From: Macrostomum lignano
Taxonomy: Eukaryota
Direction: 5' to 3'
Assembly (NCBI GenBank): GCA_002269645.1
Contig: NIVC01000068.1
Location: forward strand, 496,001-560,000
DNA: 64,000 nucleotides
Shown here: piece after piece, positions 3,347 through 38,428 of the stretch
Numbering within the stretch: position 1 is the first letter of the stretch
Layout: each line of letters starts with the position of its first letter
Made by a program: the position numbers and the translations under genes
Notes under the pieces: generated by a model
Databases searched by the model: none
Told to the model about the DNA's origin: nothing
Seen by the model: the letters and a program-made list of their open reading frames with translations, nothing else

Positions 3347-3884
3347 ACCGTTACCCAGAAGATGGCAGATAGACAGAGTGCTGAACTACATAAACTCTAA
3401 CTCAGCTCTGGCTTCAAGGCTATAAAGGTTTATTATAGATGCTGCAGTTGGGAGGAAATGGATACGGGAGAATAAAGTAGTGGAGTCAGCTGTGTGAGAC
3501 GGAACACAGCTGTGGAGGCATGGCGGAGCGGCTTTACTGCGCTTGGTCAAGCGACAACCGCGCCTCCCATGAACCGTGGTTAATGGCTGTTGCTCACGCA
3601 GGGTGCTCCTATAGGCCTTGCATTGTGCTGGGCCTCGTGTTGAGCAGCTATCTGGTTGCAGATTTGCATTTGCAATGCAAGTTTTTCTTCGATCTATCAC
3701 ATTTCAACTTGATTTATGTGTGTTGCTTTCTGACTATGCCATTGTATCGCTGTTGGAAACAACTTTCCAGGAAATATTGTGCACTTTCCAGGAAATTTGT
3801 GACTAGGAAGGTCGGAGTCTCATTCAGTTAGGGTGGCCCAGTGACTTCCAAGTCCAAAGGGGGAGTTTGTGGCTGGCCTAGCAA

Positions 3885-4276
3885 CTGAGGATCTATGAGG
3901 CTGGCCCAGCAACTGAGGATCTGGGAGGCTGGCCCAGCAACTGAGGATCTGGGAGGCTTGCCCAGCAACTGAGGATTTGGGAGGCTGGCCCAGCAACTGA
4001 GGATTTGGGAGGCTGGCCCAGCAACTGAGGATCTGGGAGGCTGGCCCAGCAACTGAGGATCTGGGAGGCTGGCCCAGCAACTGAGGATCTGGGAGGTTGG
4101 CCCAGCAACTGAGGATCTGGGAGGCTGGCCCAGCAACTGAGGATCTGGGAGGCTGGCCCAGCAACTGAGGATCTGGGAGGTTGGCCCAGCAACTGAGGAT
4201 CTGGGAGGCTAGCCCAGCAACTGAGGATCTGGGAGGCTGGCCCAGCAACTGAGGATCTGGGAGGCTGGCCCAGCAA
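3885..4276. repeat. Minisatellite, 28-nt CTGGCCCAGCAACTGAGGATCTGGGAGG
   Basis: Ends 25 nt before the mGluR acceptor at 4300; same unit inverted at 21771-22500. Confidence 0.95.
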
Positions 4277-4282
4277 GCCTAA

Positions 4283-13545
<9,263 letters not shown>

Positions 13546-16586: not shown

Positions 16587-19500
16587 TCACACCCTGTCGG
16601 TTTCGTAGCCCTTGTTCTCGTTGCCCTCCGTGATGGCTGGCGGTGCAGCAGCGCCATCTTCAGGGGCGCGCTGGCTGGGGAAGCCGCTGTCTTTCTCGGT
16701 ATCTCGGCGGGAAAATTTGCTGCCAGCGCTGCTTGTGGCCTCACGTTCCTGAAAGTGGGAGAGAGAGTCGGGATCAGAGAGGGGAAGAATAGAGATCAGA
16801 GAAGGGAAGAATTGGGATCAGAGAGGGGAAGAATAGGGATCAGAGGGGGGAAGAATTGCGATCAGAAAGGAGGAAAATTGCGATCGAGAGGGGGAGAATG
16901 GAATCAGAGAGGGGAAGAATAGGGATCAGAGAGGGGAAGAATAGGGATCAGAGAGGGGAAGAATAGGGATCAGAGAGGGGAAGAATTGCGATCAGAAAGG
17001 AGGAAAATTGCGATCGAGAGGGGGAGAATTGAATCAGAGAGGGGAAGAATAGGGATCAGAGAGGGGAAGAATAGGGATCAGAGAGGGGAAGAATAGGGAT
17101 CAGAGAGGGGAAGAATTGCGATCAGAAAGGAGAAAGATTGGGATCAGAGAGGGGAAGAATTGGGATCAGAGAGGGGAAGAATTGCGATCAGAGAGGGGAA
17201 GAATTGGGATCATAGAGGGGAAGAATTGGGATCAGAGAGGGGAAGAATTGCGATCAGAGAGGGGAAGAATTGGGATCAGAGAGGGGAAGAATTGGGATCA
17301 TAGAGGGGAAGAATTGGGATCAGAGAGGGGAAGAATTGCGATCAGAGAGGGGAAGAATTGGGATCAGAGAGGGGAAGAATTGCGATCAGAAAGGAGGAAA
17401 ATTGCGATCGAGAGGGGGAGAATGGAATCAGAGAGGGGAAGGATGAAGATTAGCGAGGGGAAGAATGGAGATCAGTGTTGGAAAGATCAGAGTTCGAAGC
17501 ATAAGAATCAAATGGGAAAATTTTTAAAGCGCACTCATTATTTTACCTTAGCTTTCGGCGGACAGCAGCACAGCAGCCAAGGGAATTTCTTTTCCAGCAC
17601 GGCTCGAAATTTCGGATGGCTGAGCGAGTAGATGATCGGATTGTAGATCGCCGAGGTCTTGGCCGCCAGAACCGGGAGCTCCGAGGTGTACTGGTTCAGG
17701 TGGTCGCGTTTGCCAATAAGAGACAGGAAGGCAACGGTGGCGTAGGGAGTCCAGCTCAGCAGGTACAGCGAGATCGTGATCAGGGCGATCTTGGCTGTCT
17801 TCAAGTCACTTTTCTGATCGGCTGTGGAATTGAGTGATGCGGATGCTGATGCGGATACTGATGCGGAAAGAACCACCCAGGGCGCAGTGAATGACAGCAG
17901 CTCAACTTTTACACCTCTTAGACGTGACATCCACTGGCCCAAGAGACAGGGGCGCCAACCAAAAGACAGGGGCGCCAACCAAGAGACAAGGGCGCCAACC
18001 AAGAGACAGGGGCGCCAACCATGAGACAAGGGCGCCAACCAAGAGACACGGATGTCAACCAAGAGACAAGGGCGCCAACCATGAGACAAGGGCGCCAACC
18101 AAGAGACACGGATGTCAACCAAGAGACAAGGGCGCCAACCATGAGACAAGGGCGCCAACCAAGAGACACGAATGTCAACCAAGAGACAGGGGCGCCAACC
18201 AAGAGACAGGGGCGCCAACCAAGAGACAGGGGCGCCAACCATGAGACAGGGGCGCCAACCAAGAGACAAGGGCGCCAACCAAGAGACAGGGGCGCCAACC
18301 ATGAGACAGGGGCGCCAACCAAGAGACAAGGGCGCCAACCAAGAGACAAGGGCGCCAACCATGAGACAGGGGCGCCAACCATGAGACAGGGGCGCCAACC
18401 AAGAGACAAGGGCGCCAACCAAGAGATAAGGGCGCCAACCAAGAGACACGGATGCCAACCAAGAGACAAACGCCAATTTACCCTGTATTGGCGCCCCAGC
18501 CGCCCCTATAATAGGGAAAATGGCATATACGGTACATTCAGTCATACAGTCCAGAACCATAAGGGTCAACACCCATGGTACAGAGCGTGTGTACATGTAA
18601 ATTCCTTGCCTGGCGATGTGCACCCCTGAGTGACCGCGTGCCTGTGTACTACTTATCCGGGTGCTGGCAACTTCAAAGTTGGTGTAACACGAAAGGAACG
18701 GAAAGCACATGTAACTACTGACTGACATACCCGACTTCATGCTGTGACCGCCCATCTTCGTGGCCATCTTGATCAGCTCCAGCTCGTGAGATCGAACAGC
18801 GCGTACGATTTTGTAGTAGCAAAAGAAGATAATCGACAAAGGCAGTACAAAGCCGCAGGAGTACATCAGGCCGTTGAAAATAAGATTGCCCTTGTCCTGA
18901 CTGAGGTAGTCAAAGGTGCAGGACGTCTGGAAGCCTTCCGGTACGAAGTAGCCTGGAAAATACAAGTAATCGATGTAATTATAGATTGACAGGAAGTGTA
19001 CTTTTCATACCCTATTCAAGCGTAAAAAACTTTGCAAGAGAATAGAAGTCGATGAGTGATGTAGAACGCGGCGTGAGGTGGGGGTTTTGTACGAGAGTAA
19101 TCTGCTGTCTACATGTGCGCATCAGTCCTCAATGTACATATTTGGCAGTTAATCAGAGAGGCGGGGTGGAAGAGAAGAATTGGAGGGGGGTTGGGGCGCG
19201 GCGTGAGGCGGGGTGCGGAGATTTTTCAAACCAAGCGGGCACTCACAACGAATGTACATAGTTGGCAGTAATCAGAGAGAGGACTGTGCAGGGATAGAGA
19301 AGTGTTGGGTTGGGGGGGTTGGGGCGAGGCGTGAGGCGGGGTTTGGAGAGTCACGAAATCAAGCGAACGAACATTATTTTGCGGAAATCAAATCAGCAAA
19401 GGAAAGACAAAAGATAGGGAACATGTGTTTGGAATTGCTAAAATCAAATGTACGCAAGCCTTACAATGTACACAAACCGAAGGTTTGGCATCCTGAAAGT

Positions 19501-27500: not shown

Positions 27501-29479
27501 GTACAAGTACATGTAGGACGCAACACGTACGCTTAGATCATGCGAATTTCACTGAAGCTCGACTTACTACTCCAGAATTCGTAATGAACTTTTTATTTGT
27601 CGAATCAATGGTGCATTTAGTATTTTCTCGAGAAATCGACTTTTTCCATAGACCGAATTTGTCTATGGCCAAACCCCATTCAGCGCTACGCGTTCTCGAG
27701 GGTGTACTGAATACAGTGGCGACGCGACAAATATGCGGTTCCTTACTGGCATTCAACTCATTTCTAAGAAAAGCGATGGGTGGCATCCTATTACATGTAC
27801 TTCAGTTGTGCCAGTGGGGCTTTGTTGGATTTTTTGTGTACATTTACGAGCGTCGTAGGTACGTAAATGTTTTTTTTGCTAAAAATGATACACGTAGGAA
27901 AAGACTCGATCAAAATTACAGGGAAATTGATGGTTTGAACTGATATCTTTGAATATCTTTCCGGGAATTTGCTGGATGGAACCTTCAGAGGAACATTTGT
28001 GGTATTGAAAAGACTTTGTTGAAACAATATTTTAGGCTCAATGCACTCTGGATATCCCATCATGGGCTATTTGGACTATGACGAGTGCTTGCTATCGGTG
28101 GACAAGGTTCTCAACAAAGGATCCTGGGGCCCGATCCATGAGCTGTGCCACAACCATCAGTGGCGCCTGAGCGAATTTAGCGGCACAGTGGAGGCGTCCA
28201 ACAATTTGCCAAATGTATTCGTGCACGATACGGTACGTTCGTCAGCCTTGAGCAATAAATTCCGTCTTTTGGTTGGGCGCCCCTTGTCTCTTGGTTGGCG
28301 TCCCTGTCTTTTGGTTGGGTGCCCCTGTCTTTTGGTTGGCGCCCCTGTCTTTTGTTTGGTGCCCCTGTCTTTTGGTTGGCGCCCCTGTCTCTTGGTTGGC
28401 GCCCCTGTCTCTTGGTTGGCGCCCCTGTCTTTTGGTTGGGCGCCCCTGTCTTTTGGTTGGCGCCCCTGTCTTTTGGTTGGGCGCCCCTGTCTTTTGGTTG
28501 GGCGCCCCTGTCTTTTGGTTGGCGCCCCTGTCTTTTGGTTGGGTGCCCCTGTCTTTTGGTTGGCGCCCCTGTCTTTTGTTTGGTGCCCCTGTCTTTTGGT
28601 TGGCGCCCCTGTCTTTTGGTTGGCGCCCCTGTCTTTTGGTTGGCGCCCCTGTCTTTTGGTTGGGCGCCCCTGTCTTTTGGTTGGCGCCCCTGTCTTTTGG
28701 TTGGGCGCCCCTGTCTTTTGGTTGGGCGTCCCTGTCTCTTGGTTGGGCGCCCCTGTGCCTTGGTGGGCGTCCTTGTCTCTTGTTGGACTCCCCTGTCTCT
28801 TGGTGGGCGCCCATGGCCTTAGCGGATCCGTATAGAAGTTCTGCTCAGCCAGCTAAACGTAAAGTCTAGTATAGCATTATAACACGAAGATTAACTAGCT
28901 GACAATGGCTTGCTCCGTTGATCCCTGAGCACGCATACTCACACAGGGTGGTACAGCGGCCCTGAGTCTCTCATCGTTAGGTATATACACGTACTCTGTG
29001 CATTTCTGGGGCTGATCGCTACCCTGCCATGCCCCCAAAGCAGAGGACCGCTTGGAAGTGTCCCTTTATAGAGTTCTTTCAATGGCTTTCAGATTCTACG
29101 CGTGTCCCGCTCTTGCCATCCAAGCCTGGCGCCTGAATCACGCCAGTCCCAGCGCCAGGCTTATATCGCGGCCGGAAAGCGATTCGACGCCGACTGGAAC
29201 GTCTGGGTAGCGCTGGACACTTTTCTGCAACTGCAGGAGACCTTCGGCTGGGAGCCGTTTAAAGCATTGAATCGAACGTATCGAACCGAGGAGGCGCTGA
29301 CGCATTTGGCTGACGGCAGCGACCAGTCCAGGATCGATGCATATTTGAAGCTGCTGTCGGTCCAAGTGTCGCTCAACTTAACGCCATTCTTTCTTGCCTG
29401 GGGCTTCCCGATCTCGGAGGCTGTGCAGGCGGAGCTGAGCAGCCTGCCTGAATGGAGGGACCATCCGATGTCTGGATAA
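23950..29479 (+). CDS. TCAF: TCAF/FAM115-like M60-type zinc metallopeptidase, about 753 aa. Exons 23950-24305, 24558-24933, 25724-25888, 26436-26819, 27077-27473, 28036-28232, 29093-29479
   Basis: Seven exons, 2262 nt in frame. Motifs YGKGRAVHFGHE, GGCLLSGGHAWYW, DSFPG, WRQTGAYAPPG, NPYGGIVY, PMFEL, ERIVLDKAISTGSMHSGYPIM, WGPIHELCHNHQ, VEASNNL, WNVWVALDTFLQLQETFGWEPF, NLTPFFLAWGFPI. Confidence 0.9.
24307..24542. repeat. (GACA/GGCA)n microsatellite, intronic
   Basis: Starts at the TCAF donor 24306. Confidence 0.95.
24941..25692. repeat. Intronic minisatellite, 17-nt GGGAATGTGAAGCCTAT
   Basis: Fills TCAF intron 24934-25723. Confidence 0.95.
26037..26318. repeat. Intronic array, ~13-nt AGAAGACAAGGAC
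   Basis: TCAF intron 25889-26435. Confidence 0.9.
28263..28810. repeat. Intronic minisatellite, ~20-nt GGTTGGCGCCCCTGTCTTTT
   Basis: TCAF intron 28233-29092; reverse complement of the opsin-intron unit. Confidence 0.93.
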
Positions 29480-31061: not shown

Positions 31062-32070
31062 TTATAGACATTGAGACAGTTTGCGAACAGCCGCCAGCTG
31101 GAGGTCGAAGCCCTTCTCCAGCCCCAGGTACACCTCAACCGCCGAGCTCCGCCAGTCGACCAGGGCCTTGACGAGCGGCAGCGGCACACCGGCGCGCAAG
31201 GCCAGCGAGGCGCCGCCGCGTCGAAGGCTGTGAGGAGACAGAGACCGGTCTGCCAGGCCGGCACGGTGGACGACGTGCTGAAACAGGCGACAGACCCGGG
31301 TGCCGGTCAGAGGCGTCAGGCCGCCGCTGCTTCGGTAGGCGAAGAGGTGGGCAGCAGCGGCGCGGTCGGGCTGGTTGATGCGCAGGTGGTGAAGCAGCGC
31401 TGCCACCGGGCAGAGCGGGTGCTGCGCCGCGTGCCGGAGGCGCGGCAGGACAACGCGGTGCACTCGCTGGCGGTACTGGTTCGTCTTGGAGCGCCGAATG
31501 TGCAGGATGGCCAGATCCGGTGATACTTGCAGGTCGCCGCAGGTGACCGCCTCGCCGGCTGGTGGGAACGGTTTCGAGCAGCACAGATTGGCGCGGCGCA
31601 GGAGGCCCCAGAATCCGATCAGGACCGCCGCCCAGAAGGCTGCATCTTGAGGCTGCTGCAGACGCAGGGTTCCTCGCAGTTTGAGGAGGTCACCCGGAGT
31701 GATGGGCTCCTTGCGCGCCGGCGGCTTGGCGAGTTTGCGCTGCACACCGCGGAGGAGCAGGTCGATGCGGGGGTCGCGAGGAAGGCCGCGGCCGGTCTTG
31801 AGCTTGCAGTGCAGGCCCGCGGCGTTAATGTACGCACCGACGCTGGCATGCGAGGAGAGGCGGTCGGACAGCGCGATGATGTAGTGCGCGACCTGCTGCA
31901 GAGACGGTCTGGTGCTGTCGATGCGCATCTGCTTGCAGAACCGCTTCCAGGAGTCAATCTGGCAGCGGTAAGAGCGCGCGGTTGTCTCAGCAAAGGCCAG
32001 GTGGCAGAGCTCGCGGTAGCGCTTGCTGAAGTTCGCGCTCGGGACTTGAGGCGGGCGATCTGCAGGGCGA
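31062..32070 (-). CDS. Tyrosine recombinase (YR) of the retrotransposon
   Basis: Open from about 32070 (first ATG at 31928): LAFAETTARSYRCQIDSWKRFC, GFWGLLRRANL (catalytic R), IRRSKTNQY (K), CPVAAL, HSLRRGGA (HxxR), DWRSSAVEVYL (W, Y). Confidence 0.93.
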
Positions 32071-33816
32071 GAAATTCACAGGTGGCTGACGAGAGGGTGT
32101 GCTCTCTAAGGTTGCTAAGGTCAGGGTGAACAGAGCCAAAGAGCCGGAGCAGGAAGTTTGTCAGCTCGCTGATGTCATCGGCTCGGCTGCCACTATCAGC
32201 AAAGATCTGGAATGTCCCAGGGACGTGGAAGTCCTGGACGGAGAGGTCGCGGTGCGCAGCGAGGAGCATCAACTGTGGCAGAGCCGAGTTGACGACCCGA
32301 TTTGGTGAGGAGCCCTTGTTGATGGCGCCGACTGCGGCGGTGCTGTCAGAGTAGATCACAAGTTGGCTGCCCGGTTGCAGCTGCTGCTGGAAATGCAGGG
32401 CCGTAAGCACTGGCGCGAGACTTTCCTTGAAGTTGATGTGCAGCGGCTCGATCTCGGTTGAGTCGCGGTGCCAGTCCATGATGAGCCAGCTGGTGGTGTC
32501 TGGGCCGCGGATGATGCCGCAGCCGCCCCAGTTGGACGCGTCGGACTCGATGGCCCAGCTGGGCCCACGGGAACGCCAGATTTTGCAGCTGGGGGAGGCG
32601 GCCAGGCAGGCGTCCCACCAGCTAAGGATCTCGCGGAGATCATTGTGCACGCGCAGTTTGTGCCGCTGCTGCTTCAGGTAGCTGAGCTCGAGCAGGAGTG
32701 GTCTCAGGAAGCACCTCCCGATGCGGACCACCTGGCAGACCCAGTTGATGCGGCCACAGAGCGATTGGAGTTGGCGCTTGGTGATGCGCTTGCGAGAGAG
32801 CGCGGACTGCAGCTGAGACTTGGTGGCGTCGAGCTTGTCCTTCGGAAGCTCCAGCAGGCCGCTGACGGTGTCGATGAGGACGCCCAGGTAGACCAGTCTG
32901 GTGCACGGCGCCACCACCTTGCTCCAGTTGATGGAGAAGCCAAGCTTCCGCAGCAGGTTGAGCAGGGTGTCGAGAGCGAGCTGGCAGTCGTCCTTGCTGG
33001 GGGCTGCTATGGCGAAGTCGTCGACATAGCTGCCGATATCGTTGAAGCCCCGTCTCTGCATCATGCGCTTGACGGCTTGGCTCAGGCGGTGGAAAACTTC
33101 CACGGAGGCAGCAGCGCCAAAGGGGAGCCGCGTGTCGCAGATGTACGAATCGCTGCGCTGGTCGCTGAATTTCCACTTCAAGCCGGTGAGCCGAAAATCG
33201 TGCAGGCTGATGCCGACACTCCGGTAGGCATTGGCGAGGTCGACTTTGGCCATGAACCAACCGGGTTGCAGCTTGGCGGTGAAGTGACTGACGGTCTCGA
33301 ACTTGATTCGGTAGTCGGAAGAAATCGGCTGTTTAGGGAGAGACCCGGAGGGTTAGAGCAGTCGTGGATGAGTCGAATCTTGTTGTTGCCCTTCGGAATG
33401 GCGCCAAGGGCGCTGATGACCTCCGGTTTGTCACTGACTTGAACGTAGCGGCCATTAAGGATTTCCTCTCGTACCTGCTGCTCGACCAGCTGCCGGTAAC
33501 TGTTGACTGATAGGTAGTTCTGGATTTCTGACATGGTTGAGGCTCTTTCTGACGGGTCAGGGCAGGTGAGTTGGAAGCCGTTGCGGGTGCCATTCAGCAG
33601 GAATTCGCGATCAGGATCGTCAGTCAGCTCAGTTTCCCAGGCGGCTGTGGCGAGGTCGGATGAGAAAGCGACGGACTCGAGGGGCTTGGGACAGGGCCAG
33701 CCGGGGGGCAGCGGGGGTTCGACTTTGGCTTCCGCCGGGGCAGCTGCGCTGCCAGTTGAGCCCCCCAGCCGGCCGCGATCTAGTTTTTTGAAGTGCAGAA
33801 CTGGCGCGGGTGCGCC
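31619..33816 (-). CDS. Reverse transcriptase/RNase H (pol) of the YR retrotransposon, with a 1-nt frameshift near 33326
   Basis: Frame opens after a TGA near 33817: AWETELTDDPDREFLLNGTRNGF, ISALGAIPKGNNKIRLIHDCS, then (shifted) AKVDLANAYR, DTRLPFGAAASVEVF, YVDDF, NWSKVVAP, YLGVLIDT. RH motifs IESDASNWG, HINFKES, YSDSTAAV. The 3' tail of this ORF overlaps YR. Confidence 0.9.
33695..33789 (-). promoter_or_regulatory. Putative -1 programmed ribosomal frameshift signal (gag to pol)
   Basis: A_AAA_AAC at 33789-33783 immediately before the gag UAG; pol is in the -1 frame; 8-nt spacer; 15-bp stem 33774-33760 / 33709-33695. Confidence 0.7.
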
Positions 33817-34547
33817 TCATAGCAGGCGGAGCAGACGTGCCTGAACTTGCAGTCGCGCCGTAGGCAGCCGTTGCGGTTGAACTTCACGCAAAGCTCCCGC
33901 CCCTCAGGATCGATCGGGCCGCCGAAGCCGGACGGCTGCTGCTTTGGCTTACTGGACTCTAAATTGGAGCGCTAGGGGATCGCGTTGCCGCCCTGATTTG
34001 ACTTTGGTGCCAGAATGTGATTGGATAGCAGCTGCAGCGACTCCCGCTCCCGACGGCCTGGCAGAAGTGCTGTAGAGGCCTTGAAGGCCCAGGTCTGGAA
34101 GTCCCAGCTCCGGCTCATAGGCAGCAGGGGCCGGTCAATCGGCAAGGGGCTCTGCAACTTACGGCTCTGTTGGCCAGGCTTGTTCTCCAGCTCAGCCTCG
34201 ATCTCAGCAGTCTGGCGTTGAAGAGTCCTCAGCCGAAGCAGCTTCTCCTGACGGGCGATCCTCTGGTCCAAATCCTCGGTGCCCTGCGGGGCGCCAGCCT
34301 CGTCCAGGGTCGCTTCCTCATCGTCGTCGCTGCTGCTGGTGCTGACTCGGTCGATTTCGCTCGAGTGAGTGGCTGTTGGCCGTCTACGTTGGTTGGCTTG
34401 ATTTGAGAAACTGGCTTGTTCCAGTGTGACTTGCAACTCTCGCTTGCGACCGCCACTGGGCCAGTTGGCGTAGACGGTCTCTAAGCTGCCTTGCAGTGAT
34501 TTGGTCAATTGAAATCTCGGCCATTGCAGTTGCAGCCTAGGCAGCAC
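33780..34547 (-). CDS. gag-like ORF1 of the YR retrotransposon, interrupted by an in-frame TAG at 33972-33974
   Basis: Coiled-coil-like segment (DLDQRIARQEKLLRLRTLQRQTAEIEAEL). After the TAG, in the same frame: ELCVKFNRNGCLRRDCKFRHVCSACYEAHPRQFCTSKN*, the C-terminal CCCH/CCHC finger typical of DIRS/Ngaro gag. Confidence 0.75.
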
Positions 34548-34919: not shown

Positions 34920-35958
34920 ATGGGTAACACACTGCCAGTGGAAATGTGCACTAACTTCGACATTGAAGAATTAAAACGTCTTGGCAAACGATTCAAGAAG
35001 CTCGACCTCGATGGCTCGGGCAGTCTGTCAGTTGACGAGTTCATGTCACTGCCTGAACTTCAACAGAACCCGCTGGTGCAGAGAGTCATTGACATCTTCG
35101 ATACAGATCAGAACGGTGAAGTCGATTTCAAAGAGTTTATCGATGGCGGACTCAGTTCTCTGTACGCGGAAATGAAGAGGCAAAGCTTCGGTTTGCCTTC
35201 CAGATCTACGATATTGACATGGGCGGCTATATCTGCAATGGGGACCTGGTCCTGTGGCCTCCATAGGGATCCAGTGTATCAGGACAGGCGATGGGTGCAC
35301 AGACAGAGATCGGGAAGGTAGAGTGACAAGTGACAACTAAGAGACTGACAGATGTTGCGAGAGTGACAGATACTTGTAGAGTGACAGATACTTTTAGAGT
35401 GACAGATACTTGTAGAGTGACAGATACTTGTAGAGTGACAAATACTTTTAGAGTGACAGATACTTGTAGAGTGACAAATACTTTTAGAGTGACAGATACT
35501 TGTAGAGTGACGGATACTTGTAGAGTGACAGATACTTTTAGAGTGACAGATACTTGTAGAGTGACGGATACTTGTAGAGTGACAGATACTGGTAGAGTGA
35601 CAAATACTGGTAGAGTGACAGATAAACGAAATAGAGTGACAGATACTTGATAGTGAAGACGGATAATCGAGATAATGACAGATGCTGGTGGAGTGACTGA
35701 TATTGATTGAGTGACATGAATCGAGATTGGGTGACTGATACTTCTAGAGTGACAGATAACTTTCACGCCACCCATACCCCCTACCAGGTGCTGAAGATGA
35801 TGGTCGGCAACAACCTGAAAGACAGCCAGCTGCAGCAAATAGTGGACAAGACAATTATCTTTGCCGACAAGGATGGAGACGGCAGAATTTCCTTTGAAGA
35901 ATTCCGCGACGTGGTCAGTGGACTCGACGTTCATAAGAAAATGGTTGTAGACATTTAA
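34920..35958 (+). pseudogene. CanB: Calcineurin B (protein phosphatase 2B regulatory subunit), frameshifted in this sequence. Exons about 34920-35248 and 35788-35958
   Basis: MGN...[56 protein letters not shown]; after a 1-nt deficit at 35148-35152, [21 protein letters not shown]; exon 2 [39 protein letters not shown]...KMVVDI*. Family identity is certain; pseudogene versus assembly error is not. Confidence 0.85.
35330..35650. repeat. Intronic array, 18-nt AGAGTGACAGATACTTGT
   Basis: Calcineurin B intron. Confidence 0.9.
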
Positions 35959-36189
35959 ACTGGCGTGTTGAAGAGTGTTCATTCTTTCCTTGAGCGTAGT
36001 ACTATGATAATTAATTATTCAACTTCGTTTTACTATTCTTACCTATTATGTTTCCTTGCTTTCAATGTATTCCAGGAATCCTAAATTGTCTGTCATGGTT
36101 TTGTTATATTTATTTATAACACAATACTTTCGTGTTTTTGTTATAACAAATCAGATTAATAGCCTGTTAGATATGGGTTAACTATCTTT

Positions 36190-36625
36190 TAGACATGCGT
36201 TAACTACCTGTTAGATATGGGGTTAATTACCTGTTAGATATGAGGTTAATTACCTGTTAGATATGGGGCTAATTACCTGTTAGATATGAGGTTAATTACC
36301 TGTTAGATATGGGGTTAATTACCTGTTAGATATGAGGTTAATTACCTGTTAGATATGGGGTTAATTACCTGTTAGATATGAGGTTAATTACCTGTTAGAT
36401 ATGGGGTTAATTACCTGTTAGATATGAGGTTAATTACCTGTTAGATATGGGGTTAATTACCTGTTAGATATGAGGTTAATTACCTGCTAGATATGGGCTA
36501 ATAACCTGTTTGGTATGAAGTTAATTATCCGTTAAAAATGAAATTAACTACCTGTTAGATATAGGGTTAATTACCTGTTAGATATGATGTTAATTACCTG
36601 ATAGATATGGGGTTAATTGCCTGTT
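36190..36625. repeat. Minisatellite, 23-nt TTAATTACCTGTTAGATATG(A/G)GG
   Basis: Downstream of calcineurin B; alternating A/G variants. Confidence 0.92.
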
Positions 36626-37284
36626 AGAATTACCTTTTTTACTTCAAAACTATTTTCCGACATGAAAAATTAATTTTGTCTCTTGCATGTGTATTTATAA
36701 CGAATAACGAGGGTTGCAATTTCGACCGGGTTTTTCGAGACTCATTTTTATTGTGTTATTTTATCGAGAATTTCTTGTCAGTAATTGTAAAATCTTGGCT
36801 GCTAGGATGAACAAAAATTTATAGACTTAATGCGGATCATTCGATAATTTTAATTAATACTTTTTAATATTTGTTTTACTCTCTTGCCTAAATGAAATGA
36901 TGTTGTTTATTTCCCAGCTGCCTCTGACCGTTTTGCTTTATAAGTACAAAAGCTACTTGTATAGTGTATGAGACACAGAAGTTATAAATTTTTTTTTTTT
37001 TAGTGTCATTTATATTTTATTTGTCGTTTGTTTTTTTCTGTGTTGTCTATTTTTTGTTATACTCGAGTGGCAGAGCCGGACTAAAAATATATTGGATTTT
37101 GGCAAAGCTATCTGTGACCGCTCTCCTTCTCTCTCGCACTTCTATCTCGTGTGTCCAAGTTCTTTCTGTCTTTTATTTACCGCGATTATGACTTCTGGCA
37201 AATATGTTCTCTCATTTTTTTATTGTTTTTCACTTATTTTAACTCAAATTTGATTTGGATACTCGGGTTTCTCGTATTTTCACT

Positions 37285-37323
<39 letters not shown>

Positions 37324-38428
37324 TCCCTTTCTCCCTCTCTCCCTCTCCCCCTCCCTCTCTCCCTCTCTCCCTCACTCTCTCCCTTCTCCCCTCTCCCTCT
37401 CTCTCTCCCTCTCTCTCTCTTCTTCTCTCTTCATCTCTCCCTCTCTACCTTTCTCTCTCCCCGTCTTCCTCTGCATATATAAACAGTAAAAACTAGTATA
37501 CTCGTAGTTTAAAAAAGTAAAATAATTAACTGCTAATACAGCAACGAATTGATTGCCGGGTTTTCATTTTTACGCTCGTAAGTAATATTTATTCGCTTTG
37601 GATGCTATTTATTGCCTTAGTAACACATTTGAAACAAATTAAAATACCAGGGCTAGAAAAGAAACGCAAAAAGGTAATTTTTTTGCTGAAAAAATGAAAA
37701 TCAACTTCCAAATTACAAGTTTTTTACGTTAATCCAAGCAATTTGAAACGGCGCCTCAAAACGTATTGTTTAATTGTAACGAATTTGGCGCTAATTTGAA
37801 TTCGATTGGGAGTAATTTAAAATTAATGATAAAGCGAAATGAGCGCGTCGCAGATTTGATGAAGAATAGATAATATTATGAGGCATTGTTGAAATGCAGT
37901 TTGGCATAACGCAGCAATTAGCAAATTAACAAAATTGAAAAAAATGTTTTTTGAAGAAGTTTCCAATACAACACCGATTTTGTGTTGGTAATATCCGATG
38001 TGCACTACTGCTCAGTAGCAAAATAAGGAGTGAATCGTTTTATGCTTAGCGTTCCTACATGTAGTAAGAGAGTCATACAAGTGCATGTATCTCCTTATAG
38101 AATTAAAAATATGTATAATAAACCATCGCGTGCAATTAAGTATCTATTTTGATAATAAAATGAAGCAGTTATAGAAGGAAATTATTGCTCAAATACATAT
38201 GTCGACTCAATAAAAAGTTAATTAATAACTATATTTAATTTCAAAAATCGGGTTGGGTGCCTAATAGAAAATGCGAGATTTGTTGATAACAAGCCGGTAG
38301 AAAGTAAAACTTTAGGTGCAACAAATGACTTTATCTAAATTATTAAACACTGGTTTTAATTGTACGTCGGGCATTTTATTGCTGCTATAATCATTAATTT
38401 TATTACTGTAGTTTCAATTTTTCAAAAA

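What the first reader, a model, noticed from the sequence alone, without database searches (positions are those of the whole stretch)
33695..33789. Complete -1 ribosomal frameshift cassette at the gag/pol junction of an Ngaro/DIRS-type retrotransposon
Seen: on the minus strand gag ends ACT TCA AAA AAC TAG, while pol reads TTC AAA AAA CTA GAT, exactly the -1 frame. Pol is open only from a TGA near 33817 and has no ATG before about 33534, although conserved pol motifs (WETELTDDPDREFLLNG) lie upstream of that ATG. The heptamer A_AAA_AAC (33789-33783) is followed by an 8-nt spacer and a 15-bp stem GGCCGGCUGGGGGGC / GCCCCCCGGCUGGCC. The stem has 13 Watson-Crick pairs plus 2 pairs that are G.U only on the sense strand, and its loop contains a 6-bp hairpin GGCAGC-GCA-GCUGCC (33739-33753). 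Established: A_AAA_AAC is the MMTV and HTLV gag-pro slippery site, and 5-9-nt spacers plus a downstream structure define -1 PRF. Inference: this YR retroelement makes a Gag-Pol fusion by retrovirus-style frameshifting. I do not know this to be well characterised in DIRS/Ngaro elements.
Basis: partly seen in the sequence, partly recalled or inferred. Interest (0 to 1): 0.8.

Follow-up and report, generated by a model that had tools for sequence, protein, structure and literature searches.

The report
Frameshift signal in a dead Ngaro retrotransposon
A decayed copy of a tyrosine-recombinase (Ngaro-type) retrotransposon still carries a textbook -1 ribosomal frameshift signal between its gag-like and polymerase genes, and the same slippery heptamer sits at the same junction in about two dozen distant relatives, so the signal is real, but its mechanism is ordinary for retroelements.

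Summary
On the minus strand A_AAA_AAC (33789-33783) lies in the gag-like frame, directly before UAG. An 8-nt spacer follows, then a 15-bp stem (33774-33760 with 33709-33695; 13 Watson-Crick and 2 G.U pairs) that closes a 50-nt loop. Pol is in the -1 frame, opens 37 nt before the gag stop, and has no ATG ahead of its conserved domain.

Among 42 related loci with a long ORF1, pol is in -1 in 35. Of those, 23 carry in-frame A_AAA_AAC in the short overlap, against 0.28 expected. Others carry G_GGA_AAC or U_UUA_AAC.

Against the one close relative (L001), synonymous changes switch from the gag frame to the pol frame at the heptamer.

The stem is the most stable fold in the element (z about -3) and L001 keeps it. 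It is specific to this lineage, and two sequences cannot show covariation. The inner hairpin is not conserved.

The window copy is dead: one stop and no start in gag, one frameshift in pol, no terminal repeats.

I found no paper describing frameshifting in Ngaro/DIRS elements. Seven sister lineages have pol in +1 and share a conserved UUU_CGU motif.

The parts
33783..33789 (-). Slippery heptamer A_AAA_AAC in the gag-like (0) frame, read as UC[A AAA AAC]
   Evidence: Read directly. Identical in L001. The same heptamer is in frame in 23 related gag/pol overlaps against 0.28 expected. The review PMC5009743 lists it among the most shift-prone heptamers for mammalian ribosomes.
33780..33782 (-). 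UAG stop of the gag-like ORF, directly 3' of the heptamer
   Evidence: The stop directly abuts the heptamer in 11 of the 29 heptamer-bearing sequences, counting the window and L001.
33775..33782 (-). 8-nt spacer (UAGAUCGC) between heptamer and stem
33760..33774 (-). 5' arm of the 15-bp stem (GGCCGGCUGGGGGGC)
   Evidence: L001 keeps 13 of 15 pairs.
33695..33709 (-). 3' arm of the 15-bp stem (GCCCCCCGGCUGGCC)
33739..33753 (-). 6-bp hairpin inside the 50-nt loop. It is present here but only 4 of 6 pairs survive in L001 (one A-U to G-C double change), and the MFE fold of L001 uses a different inner fold.
33780..33816 (-). 37-nt overlap of the gag-like frame and the -1 (pol) frame. The pol frame opens after the TGA at 33819-33817.
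33780..34547 (-). ORF1 (gag-like) remnant, broken: one in-frame stop, no ATG at the homologous start, and probably an internal deletion compared with relatives. The C-terminus has a CCCH and then a CCHC zinc finger and ends ...SKN.
   Evidence: No Pfam Gag domain was found; relatives show weak SAP/SAM and zf-CCCH hits.
31622..33816 (-). Pol (reverse transcriptase and RNase H region), broken by one frameshift. There are no stops inside the aligned pieces downstream of the shift site.
   Evidence: Pfam RVT_1 at 5e-15 and RVT_thumb. 76% identity to P0001 over 98% of the query. Two tblastn pieces lie in two frames.
31065..32075 (-). Tyrosine recombinase ORF, open, in the -1 frame relative to the RT/RH reading frame. 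It directly follows RNase H, with no room for a methyltransferase domain.
   Evidence: Pfam Phage_integrase at 6e-05, below the family cut-off. An H-x-x-R motif and a C-terminal Tyr are visible in the translation.

Best explanation
The site is an inherited -1 programmed ribosomal frameshift cassette at the ORF1(gag-like)/pol junction of an Ngaro-type tyrosine-recombinase retrotransposon. It is preserved here in a copy that is itself dead.

The proposed mechanism in intact relatives is as follows. Ribosomes translating ORF1 reach UCA AAA AAC, with the 15-bp G+C-rich stem lying 8 nt downstream at the mRNA entry channel. A fraction of them slip back one base by tandem tRNA slippage. They then bypass the adjacent UAG and continue into RT/RNase H, producing an ORF1-Pol fusion at a fixed ratio to ORF1.

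Shown here:
- the anatomy of the cassette;
- family-wide conservation of the heptamer in the correct frame and place;
- the absence of a pol start codon;
- the switch of the selected reading frame at the heptamer.

Inferred:
- that slippage actually occurs, and at what rate;
- that the stem is the stimulator in this lineage.
For: Anatomy is confirmed.

Close relative L001:
- The heptamer, stop and spacer context are identical, and 13 of 15 stem pairs are kept. Both G.U pairs become G-C and one G-C becomes G.U.
- Its fold has z -3.08.

Family level:
- 80 metagenomic relatives were retrieved. Of 42 with an ORF1 of at least 190 codons, pol is in -1 in 35 and in +1 in 7. The median -1 overlap is 43 nt.
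- A_AAA_AAC occurs 23 times in the overlaps, each in the gag frame and 0-36 nt before the gag stop, against 0.28 expected from its frequency elsewhere in the same loci.
- Variants found are G_GGA_AAC (L003, L043), U_UUA_AAC (L015), G_GGA_AAA (L051) and A_AAA_AAG (Argopecten irradians locus L084).
- The first three heptamers are exactly those the review PMC5009743 names as among the most shift-prone on mammalian ribosomes.
- The 29 heptamer-bearing sequences form 28 clusters at 75% nucleotide identity, so these are many separate lineages.
- 25 of 27 loci have no ATG in the pol frame between the heptamer and the conserved pol domain.
- ORF1 C-termini are homologous: CCCH and CCHC fingers, then ...(P/S)KN next to the stop.

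Internal negative control: the RT-RH/YR junction of the same loci has mixed frames and no conserved heptamer.

Codon-level comparison of the window with L001, as synonymous:non-synonymous differences:
- Upstream of the heptamer: 17:15 in the gag frame, against 4:26 and 3:29 in the other frames.
- Downstream: 15:27 in the pol frame, against 6:37 and 5:36.
- In the linker that holds the stem: 11:19, against 5:24 and 4:24.

The stem region has the lowest free energy of 171 windows across the element.
Against: - There are no expression, ribosome-profiling or peptide data.
- Only one close relative exists, so stem covariation is not significant: 253 of 500 shuffles reach the observed score. The two top pairs of the stem are lost in L001.
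- Distant relatives show no significant nested structure downstream. Median z is -0.39 against 0.02 in controls (p = 0.086). Local stability is only slightly greater (p = 0.007), and that is confounded by higher G+C.
- No Rfam frameshift element matches.
- The stem lies in G+C-rich (76%) coding sequence, where stable folds are common.
- The window copy is broken and cannot itself make the product.
Confidence: 0.8

Rival explanations
1. The heptamer is the real frameshift signal, but the 15-bp stem is incidental. On this reading it is a by-product of a G+C-rich, Pro/Gly-rich linker and not a selected stimulator. This is a variant of the best explanation, not an alternative to frameshifting.
For: - Distant relatives with the same heptamer have no comparable stem.
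- Two sequences give no significant covariation.
- The arms are not clearly better conserved than the surrounding sequence.
- Several other windows of the element reach z below -2.3.
Against: - The stem starts at the canonical 8-nt distance.
- It is the most stable fold in the whole element.
- It is kept in L001 through three substitutions that each preserve pairing.
- Its G.U pairs exist only on the sense strand.
- z is about -3 in both sequences.
Confidence: 0.2
2. Pol is made independently of ORF1, from a spliced or subgenomic RNA or by internal initiation. On this reading the conserved ...KN end of ORF1 is a protein-level motif.
For: - The tyrosine recombinase ORF of the same elements clearly needs some other, unknown expression route, since no heptamer is conserved at its junction.
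- A few relatives do have an ATG in the pol frame near the junction.
Against: - 25 of 27 loci have no ATG in the pol frame before the conserved domain.
- Conservation is at the nucleotide level: the preceding codon always ends in A, and the next two codons are AAA and AAC, not their synonyms.
- The Lys-Asn end is replaced by Gly-Asn or Leu-Asn exactly where the heptamer becomes G_GGA_AAC or U_UUA_AAC.
- The pol frame shows an excess of synonymous changes from the heptamer onward, including the linker.
Confidence: 0.07
3. The frame change is made on the RNA by polymerase slippage (transcriptional slippage) on the run of six A, not by the ribosome.
For: The heptamer contains A6, and runs of A are known slippage sites. 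The topic is covered in PMC5009743.
Against: - Relatives use G_GGA_AAC and U_UUA_AAC, which have only three A but fit tandem tRNA slippage.
- The strict X_XXY_YYZ phasing with the gag frame in every case is not required for transcriptional slippage.
Confidence: 0.05
4. The arrangement is an accident of decay. On this reading gag and pol were once in one frame, and a mutation in this dead copy created the frame difference and a chance heptamer.
For: The copy is demonstrably decayed: one stop in gag, one frameshift in pol and no terminal repeats.
Against: The same frame arrangement, heptamer and stop are present in L001 and in 27 other lineages.
Confidence: 0.02

Closest known systems
Retroviral and LTR-retrotransposon gag/pol (gag/pro) -1 frameshift cassettes
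   Same: - An X_XXY_YYZ heptamer (here A_AAA_AAC) lies at the end of gag.
- The spacer is 8 nt and a stable downstream RNA structure follows.
- Pol is in the -1 frame, has no start codon of its own and overlaps gag only briefly.
[quoted passage not shown] It also reports that 28 of 51 animal LTR retroelements surveyed in 2003 have pol in -1, many with classical heptamers.
   Different: - The host element has a tyrosine recombinase in place of protease plus DDE integrase.
- ORF1 has no recognisable Gag/capsid domain.
- The predicted stimulator is a long-range 15-bp stem closing a 50-nt branched loop. It is not a compact hairpin, and no pseudoknot partner was found.
- No measurement of frameshifting exists.
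Ngaro retrotransposons (DIRS order; Goodwin and Poulter 2004, from memory; described in PMC8547959, PMC3783388 and PMC3266345)
   Same: - The gene order is ORF1 (gag-like), RT/RNase H, tyrosine recombinase, with no methyltransferase, protease or DDE integrase.
- The relative L003 has the defining split direct repeats A1-[ORFs]-B1A2B2 (definition).
   Different: - The window copy has no detectable split direct repeats.
- It was not placed in a tree with reference Ngaro sequences, because the tools hold none.
- The papers I could search do not describe ribosomal frameshifting in Ngaro. PMC3266345 states that Ngaro elements do not usually harbour ORF overlaps.
Influenza A PA-X type +1 shift site UCC_UUU_CGU and amalgavirus UUU_CGN (relevant to the sister lineages, not to the window)
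   Same: Seven related lineages with pol in the +1 frame all carry an in-frame CCN_CGU_UUU_CGU inside the gag/pol overlap. UUU_CGU is the core of the published +1 motifs (PMC3498833 and PMC5052127).
   Different: The motif sits in a retrotransposon and not in an RNA virus. The codon before UUU is CGU, not UCC. It has not been tested.

Membership tests
Canonical eukaryotic -1 programmed ribosomal frameshift cassette | X_XXY_YYZ heptamer phased with the upstream (0) frame | tested here: met
   A_AAA_AAC at 33789-33783, phased as UC[A AAA AAC] UAG.
Canonical eukaryotic -1 programmed ribosomal frameshift cassette | Spacer of about 5-9 nt followed by a stable RNA structure | tested here: met
   The spacer is 8 nt. 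The 15-bp stem folds at -52.3 kcal/mol for 87 nt, z -3.18, and is the lowest-energy window of the element.
Canonical eukaryotic -1 programmed ribosomal frameshift cassette | Downstream ORF in the -1 frame, overlapping the upstream ORF and lacking its own start | tested here: met
   The overlap is 37 nt. The first ATG in the pol frame is at 33534, inside the conserved domain. 25 of 27 relatives have no ATG there.
Canonical eukaryotic -1 programmed ribosomal frameshift cassette | Heptamer conserved in relatives at the nucleotide level | tested here: met
   23 A_AAA_AAC occurrences in overlaps against 0.28 expected. 28 lineages carry a canonical heptamer.
Canonical eukaryotic -1 programmed ribosomal frameshift cassette | Stimulatory structure supported by covariation | tested here: inconclusive
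   Only two sequences share the stem. There are three one-sided changes and no double change in the outer stem, and 253 of 500 shuffles score as high. No structure is common to distant relatives.
Canonical eukaryotic -1 programmed ribosomal frameshift cassette | A trans-frame product, or a measured shift of ribosomes | not testable with these tools
   No expression, ribosome-profiling or proteomic data are available here.
Ngaro superfamily (DIRS order) | Reverse transcriptase/RNase H and a tyrosine recombinase, in the order ORF1, RT/RH, YR | tested here: met
   RVT_1 at 5e-15. Phage_integrase at 6e-05, which is below the Pfam cut-off, but with H-x-x-R and Tyr visible in the translation. All are co-linear on the minus strand.
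Ngaro superfamily (DIRS order) | No methyltransferase domain (this distinguishes Ngaro from DIRS1 and PAT), no protease and no DDE integrase | tested here: met
   Pfam gives no such hits. The YR ORF opens where RNase H ends, leaving no room for another domain.
Ngaro superfamily (DIRS order) | Split direct repeats A1-[ORFs]-B1A2B2 | tested here: not met
   None were found around the window copy, which is decayed and flanked by minisatellites. They are present in the relative L003: A at 3701-3924 and 8706-8929, B at 8541-8709 and 9261-9429.
Ngaro superfamily (DIRS order) | RT or YR groups with reference Ngaro elements in a phylogeny | not tested
   No reference Ngaro sequences could be obtained from the tools.

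The most novel reading that the evidence does not exclude
Ngaro-type tyrosine-recombinase retrotransposons as a group may depend on ribosomal frameshifting to make an ORF1-Pol fusion. They would use two interchangeable solutions at the same junction: a retrovirus-like -1 site (A_AAA_AAC and its classical variants) in most lineages, and a PA-X-like +1 site (CCN_CGU_UUU_CGU) in others. That would make recoding, and by implication a fixed ORF1:Pol ratio and particle-like assembly, an ancestral trait shared with LTR retroelements. I found no paper that describes this.
Probability: 0.6. Interest if true: 0.55.

Novelty: new member of a known kind. Interest (0 to 1): 0.45.

Why it matters
- It extends the classical retroviral gag-pol expression strategy to the tyrosine-recombinase retroelements. 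Their expression is essentially uncharacterised, and ORF1 is called 'gag' only by position.
- It gives annotators a simple rule for joining ORF1 and pol in these elements. Current pipelines mis-model them: the Argopecten model is flagged 'LOW QUALITY PROTEIN' and bridges the junction with a gap in the model. Several relatives are filed under bacterial genome bins.
- The coexistence of -1 and +1 solutions at one homologous junction is a natural comparative system for studying how recoding signals evolve.
- For this window itself nothing functional follows, because the copy is a fossil.

Tried and rejected
- **Rfam scan of the element.** No frameshift element was found, only a chance-level nhaA-I hit.
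- **Pseudoknot search.** Pairing of the 50-nt loop with the 55 nt downstream is no better than shuffled sequence in the window or in L001.
- **A common downstream structure across the family.** MFE z-scores and pairing probabilities at the junction are not clearly different from control windows. The stem is specific to this lineage.
- **A second slippery site at the RT-RH/YR junction.** None is conserved, and the frames are mixed.
- **More close copies of the window's lineage.** None turned up:
  - a protein search with the pol N-terminus;
  - an exact-product look-up;
  - DNA pattern scans of genome and viral collections;
  - protein-guided scans.
- **Terminal or split direct repeats around the window copy.** None were found.
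- **Genes on the opposite strand under the site.** The long plus-strand ORFs have no Pfam match.
- **ORF1 homologue search.** ORF1 is too divergent and gave only 4 hits.
- **Literature.** Seven full-text searches and the 2016 recoding review found no description of frameshifting in Ngaro/DIRS elements. In the review, only the first 300,000 characters are held. The original Ngaro paper (Goodwin and Poulter 2004) is not held, so prior mention there cannot be excluded.
Full report
**1. What is there**

On the minus strand, about 34547-31065, lies the coding part of a retroelement.
- It starts with a gag-like ORF1 ending at the UAG at 33782-33780.
- A reverse transcriptase/RNase H reading frame follows. 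Pfam gives RVT_1 at 5e-15 and RVT_thumb.
- A tyrosine recombinase ORF comes last. Its Phage_integrase hit at 6e-05 is below the Pfam cut-off, but H-x-x-R and a C-terminal Tyr are visible in the translation.
- The recombinase ORF opens where RNase H ends, so there is no room for a methyltransferase domain. Pfam finds no protease or DDE integrase.

This is the Ngaro architecture as defined in PMC8547959.

ORF1 has no Pfam Gag domain. Its C-terminus carries a CCCH finger and then a CCHC finger. Relatives show weak SAP/SAM and zf-CCCH hits. 'gag' is therefore a label by position.

Other ORFs in the window include a family-C GPCR exon, so the host is an animal.

**2. The observation**

It is correct to the base.
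- A_AAA_AAC at 33789-33783 is phased with ORF1 and directly followed by UAG.
- The -1 frame opens after the TGA at 33819-33817, giving a 37-nt overlap. Its first ATG, at 33534, lies downstream of the conserved start of pol.
- After an 8-nt spacer, 33774-33760 pairs with 33709-33695. There are 13 Watson-Crick pairs and 2 G.U pairs, and the closed loop is 50 nt.
- The loop contains the 6-bp hairpin at 33753-33739.

ViennaRNA returns exactly this fold.
- The 111-nt stretch folds at -54.3 kcal/mol, z -2.84.
- The 87-nt stem-loop alone folds at -52.3 kcal/mol, z -3.18, with 1 of 200 shuffles as good.
- Of 171 overlapping 100-nt windows across the element, the one beginning just 3' of the heptamer has the lowest free energy, and its z-score is the seventh lowest.

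**3. State of this copy**

The copy is a fossil.
- ORF1 has one in-frame stop and no ATG at the homologous start. It is about 100 residues shorter than relatives.
- Pol has one frameshift and no stops downstream of the shift site.
- The recombinase ORF is open.
- No split direct repeats are detectable, and minisatellites flank the element.

**4. The close relative**

The best protein hit, P0001, has 76% identity over 98% of the RT/RH query. It lies on a 2,996-bp Logan contig, L001.

L001 has the identical UCAAAAAACUAGAU. Its pol frame also lacks an ATG, because the gene call starts at a GVG-type alternative start codon (GTG).

How the stem fares in L001:
- 13 of the 15 stem pairs are kept.
- Both G.U pairs are G-C in L001, and one G-C is G.U.
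- The two pairs at the top of the stem are lost.
- The inner hairpin keeps 4 of 6 pairs, with one A-U to G-C double change.
- The MFE fold of L001 uses a different inner structure (z -3.08).

With two sequences the covariation controls are uninformative: 253 of 500 shuffles score as high.

Codon-level comparison shows the selected frame switching at the heptamer. Counts are synonymous:non-synonymous differences.

| Region | gag frame | pol (-1) frame | third frame |
|---|---|---|---|
| Upstream of the heptamer | 17:15 | 4:26 | 3:29 |
| Downstream of the gag stop | 6:37 | 15:27 | 5:36 |
| Linker that holds the stem | 5:24 | 11:19 | 4:24 |

**5. The family**

A scan of metagenome contigs with a pol alignment gave 80 loci at 34-46% identity. 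Most have a recombinase match downstream of pol.

- For 42 loci with an ORF1 of at least 190 codons, pol is in -1 in 35 and in +1 in 7.
- In the -1 group the median overlap is 43 nt.
- A_AAA_AAC occurs 23 times inside the overlaps, each in the ORF1 frame and 0-36 nt before the stop. From its frequency elsewhere in the same loci, 0.28 occurrences are expected.
- L003 and L043 have G_GGA_AAC, L015 has U_UUA_AAC and L051 has G_GGA_AAA.
- A scallop genomic copy (Argopecten irradians, L084) has A_AAA_AAG followed by UAG.
- The heptamer-bearing sequences fall into 28 clusters at 75% nucleotide identity.
- 25 of 27 loci have no ATG in the pol frame between the heptamer and the conserved domain.
- ORF1 tails align as zinc fingers followed by ...(P/S)KN and the stop.
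- The RT-RH/YR junction of the same loci serves as an internal control. It has mixed frames and no conserved heptamer.
- The relative L003 shows the Ngaro split direct repeats A1...B1A2B2. L002 is a circularly permuted 4,210-bp unit.

**6. The stimulator**

Across the family there is no common nested structure.
- The median z at the junction is -0.39 against 0.02 in control windows (p = 0.086).
- Pairing probability just downstream of the heptamer does not differ from controls (p = 0.10).
- Local stability is slightly greater (p = 0.007), but G+C content is also higher there.

Only the window and L001 stand out, with z of about -2.5 in that test. No pseudoknot partner was found, and no Rfam family matches.

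I therefore treat the heptamer as established by comparison. I treat the 15-bp stem as the probable stimulator specific to this lineage. The grounds are its correct spacing, its being the strongest fold in the element, and its retention in L001. It is not proven.

**7. Mechanism and rivals**

The best explanation is tandem tRNA slippage at A_AAA_AAC, stimulated by the stem, which would give an ORF1-Pol fusion in intact relatives. I put this at 0.8.

- **Independent pol expression.** This is disfavoured by the missing ATGs, by nucleotide-level rather than amino-acid-level conservation, and by the synonymous-site signal in the linker.
- **Transcriptional slippage.** This is disfavoured by the G_GGA_AAC and U_UUA_AAC variants.
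- **An accident of decay.** This is excluded by the relatives.

**8. Comparison with what is known, and novelty**

The cassette works like retroviral and LTR-retrotransposon gag-pol -1 sites. It belongs to an element that meets the Ngaro gene-content criteria. This copy fails the repeat criterion, and the element was not placed by phylogeny.

Full-text searches found no description of frameshifting in Ngaro, DIRS or tyrosine-recombinase elements. PMC3266345 says Ngaro elements do not usually harbour ORF overlaps. The held part of the recoding review mentions neither DIRS nor tyrosine recombinases, and it cites only a survey of LTR elements. The founding Ngaro paper is not held, so a prior remark there cannot be excluded.

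I rate this as a new member of a known kind. The mechanism is textbook, and the host family is the new part.

**9. Seen in passing**

The seven lineages with pol in +1 share at most about 70% nucleotide identity over long alignments. All carry in-frame CCN_CGU_UUU_CGU in the overlap, 6-45 nt before the ORF1 stop. The same UUU_CGU core is published for the influenza A PA-X +1 site and, as UUU_CGN, for amalgaviruses (PMC3498833 and PMC5052127).

Noticed in passing
L018, L020, L025, L032, L034, L052 and L055 (gag/pol overlaps; motif positions are): Seven related lineages have pol in the +1 frame, and all share an in-frame CCN_CGU_UUU_CGU motif 6-45 nt before the ORF1 stop. UUU_CGU is the core of the published +1 shift sites of influenza A PA-X and amalgaviruses. 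This suggests a second, +1, recoding solution at the same junction.
   Followed up: partly
window 31935-32050 (-), at the start of the tyrosine recombinase ORF: This stretch has the lowest z-score of 171 windows across the element (-3.4; -2.4 on refolding 116 nt, -43.6 kcal/mol). It lies where the recombinase frame opens. In relatives the recombinase is in -1 or +1 relative to RT/RH and has no conserved slippery site, so how it is expressed is unexplained.
   Followed up: partly
L084 (Argopecten irradians, GCA_041381155.1, JAYEEO010000130.1), junction near 4125-4140: A scallop copy ends ORF1 with UCA AAA AAG UAG and has pol in -1. The NCBI models P0050 and P0055 are flagged 'LOW QUALITY PROTEIN'. 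The P0055 model bridges ORF1 and pol with a gap in the model, so annotation pipelines do not recognise the frameshift.
   Followed up: yes
Protein hits P0017, P0046 and P0096: Relatives of this eukaryotic retrotransposon polymerase are filed under bacterial genome bins (Candidatus Thiodiazotropha endolucinida, Methylococcales, Sedimenticola). These are probably contigs from the animal host, not from the bacteria.
   Followed up: no
L062, L070, L080; L067, L075: Some -1 lineages lack a canonical heptamer but repeatedly show G_GAA_AAC or G_GAU_UUU just before the ORF1 stop. These may be non-canonical shift sites with imperfect P-site re-pairing.
   Followed up: no
window 35288-35763, 36153-36680, 28227-28840 and 37244-37485: Minisatellites with 18-, 23- and 20/21-nt units and a CT-rich microsatellite flank the element on both sides. 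They may have replaced or interrupted its terminal repeats.
   Followed up: no
window 7109-8413 (+) and 17538-18965 (-): One ORF has ANF_receptor, NCD3G and 7tm_3 domains (a family-C GPCR; 7tm_3 at 8e-63). Another carries a rhodopsin-family 7tm_1 fragment. The host genome is therefore an animal.
   Followed up: no
L002 1-117 and 4211-4327: The contig ends are identical, so the 4,210-bp element was assembled as a circular permutation. It is either a tandem array or a circular form.
   Followed up: no
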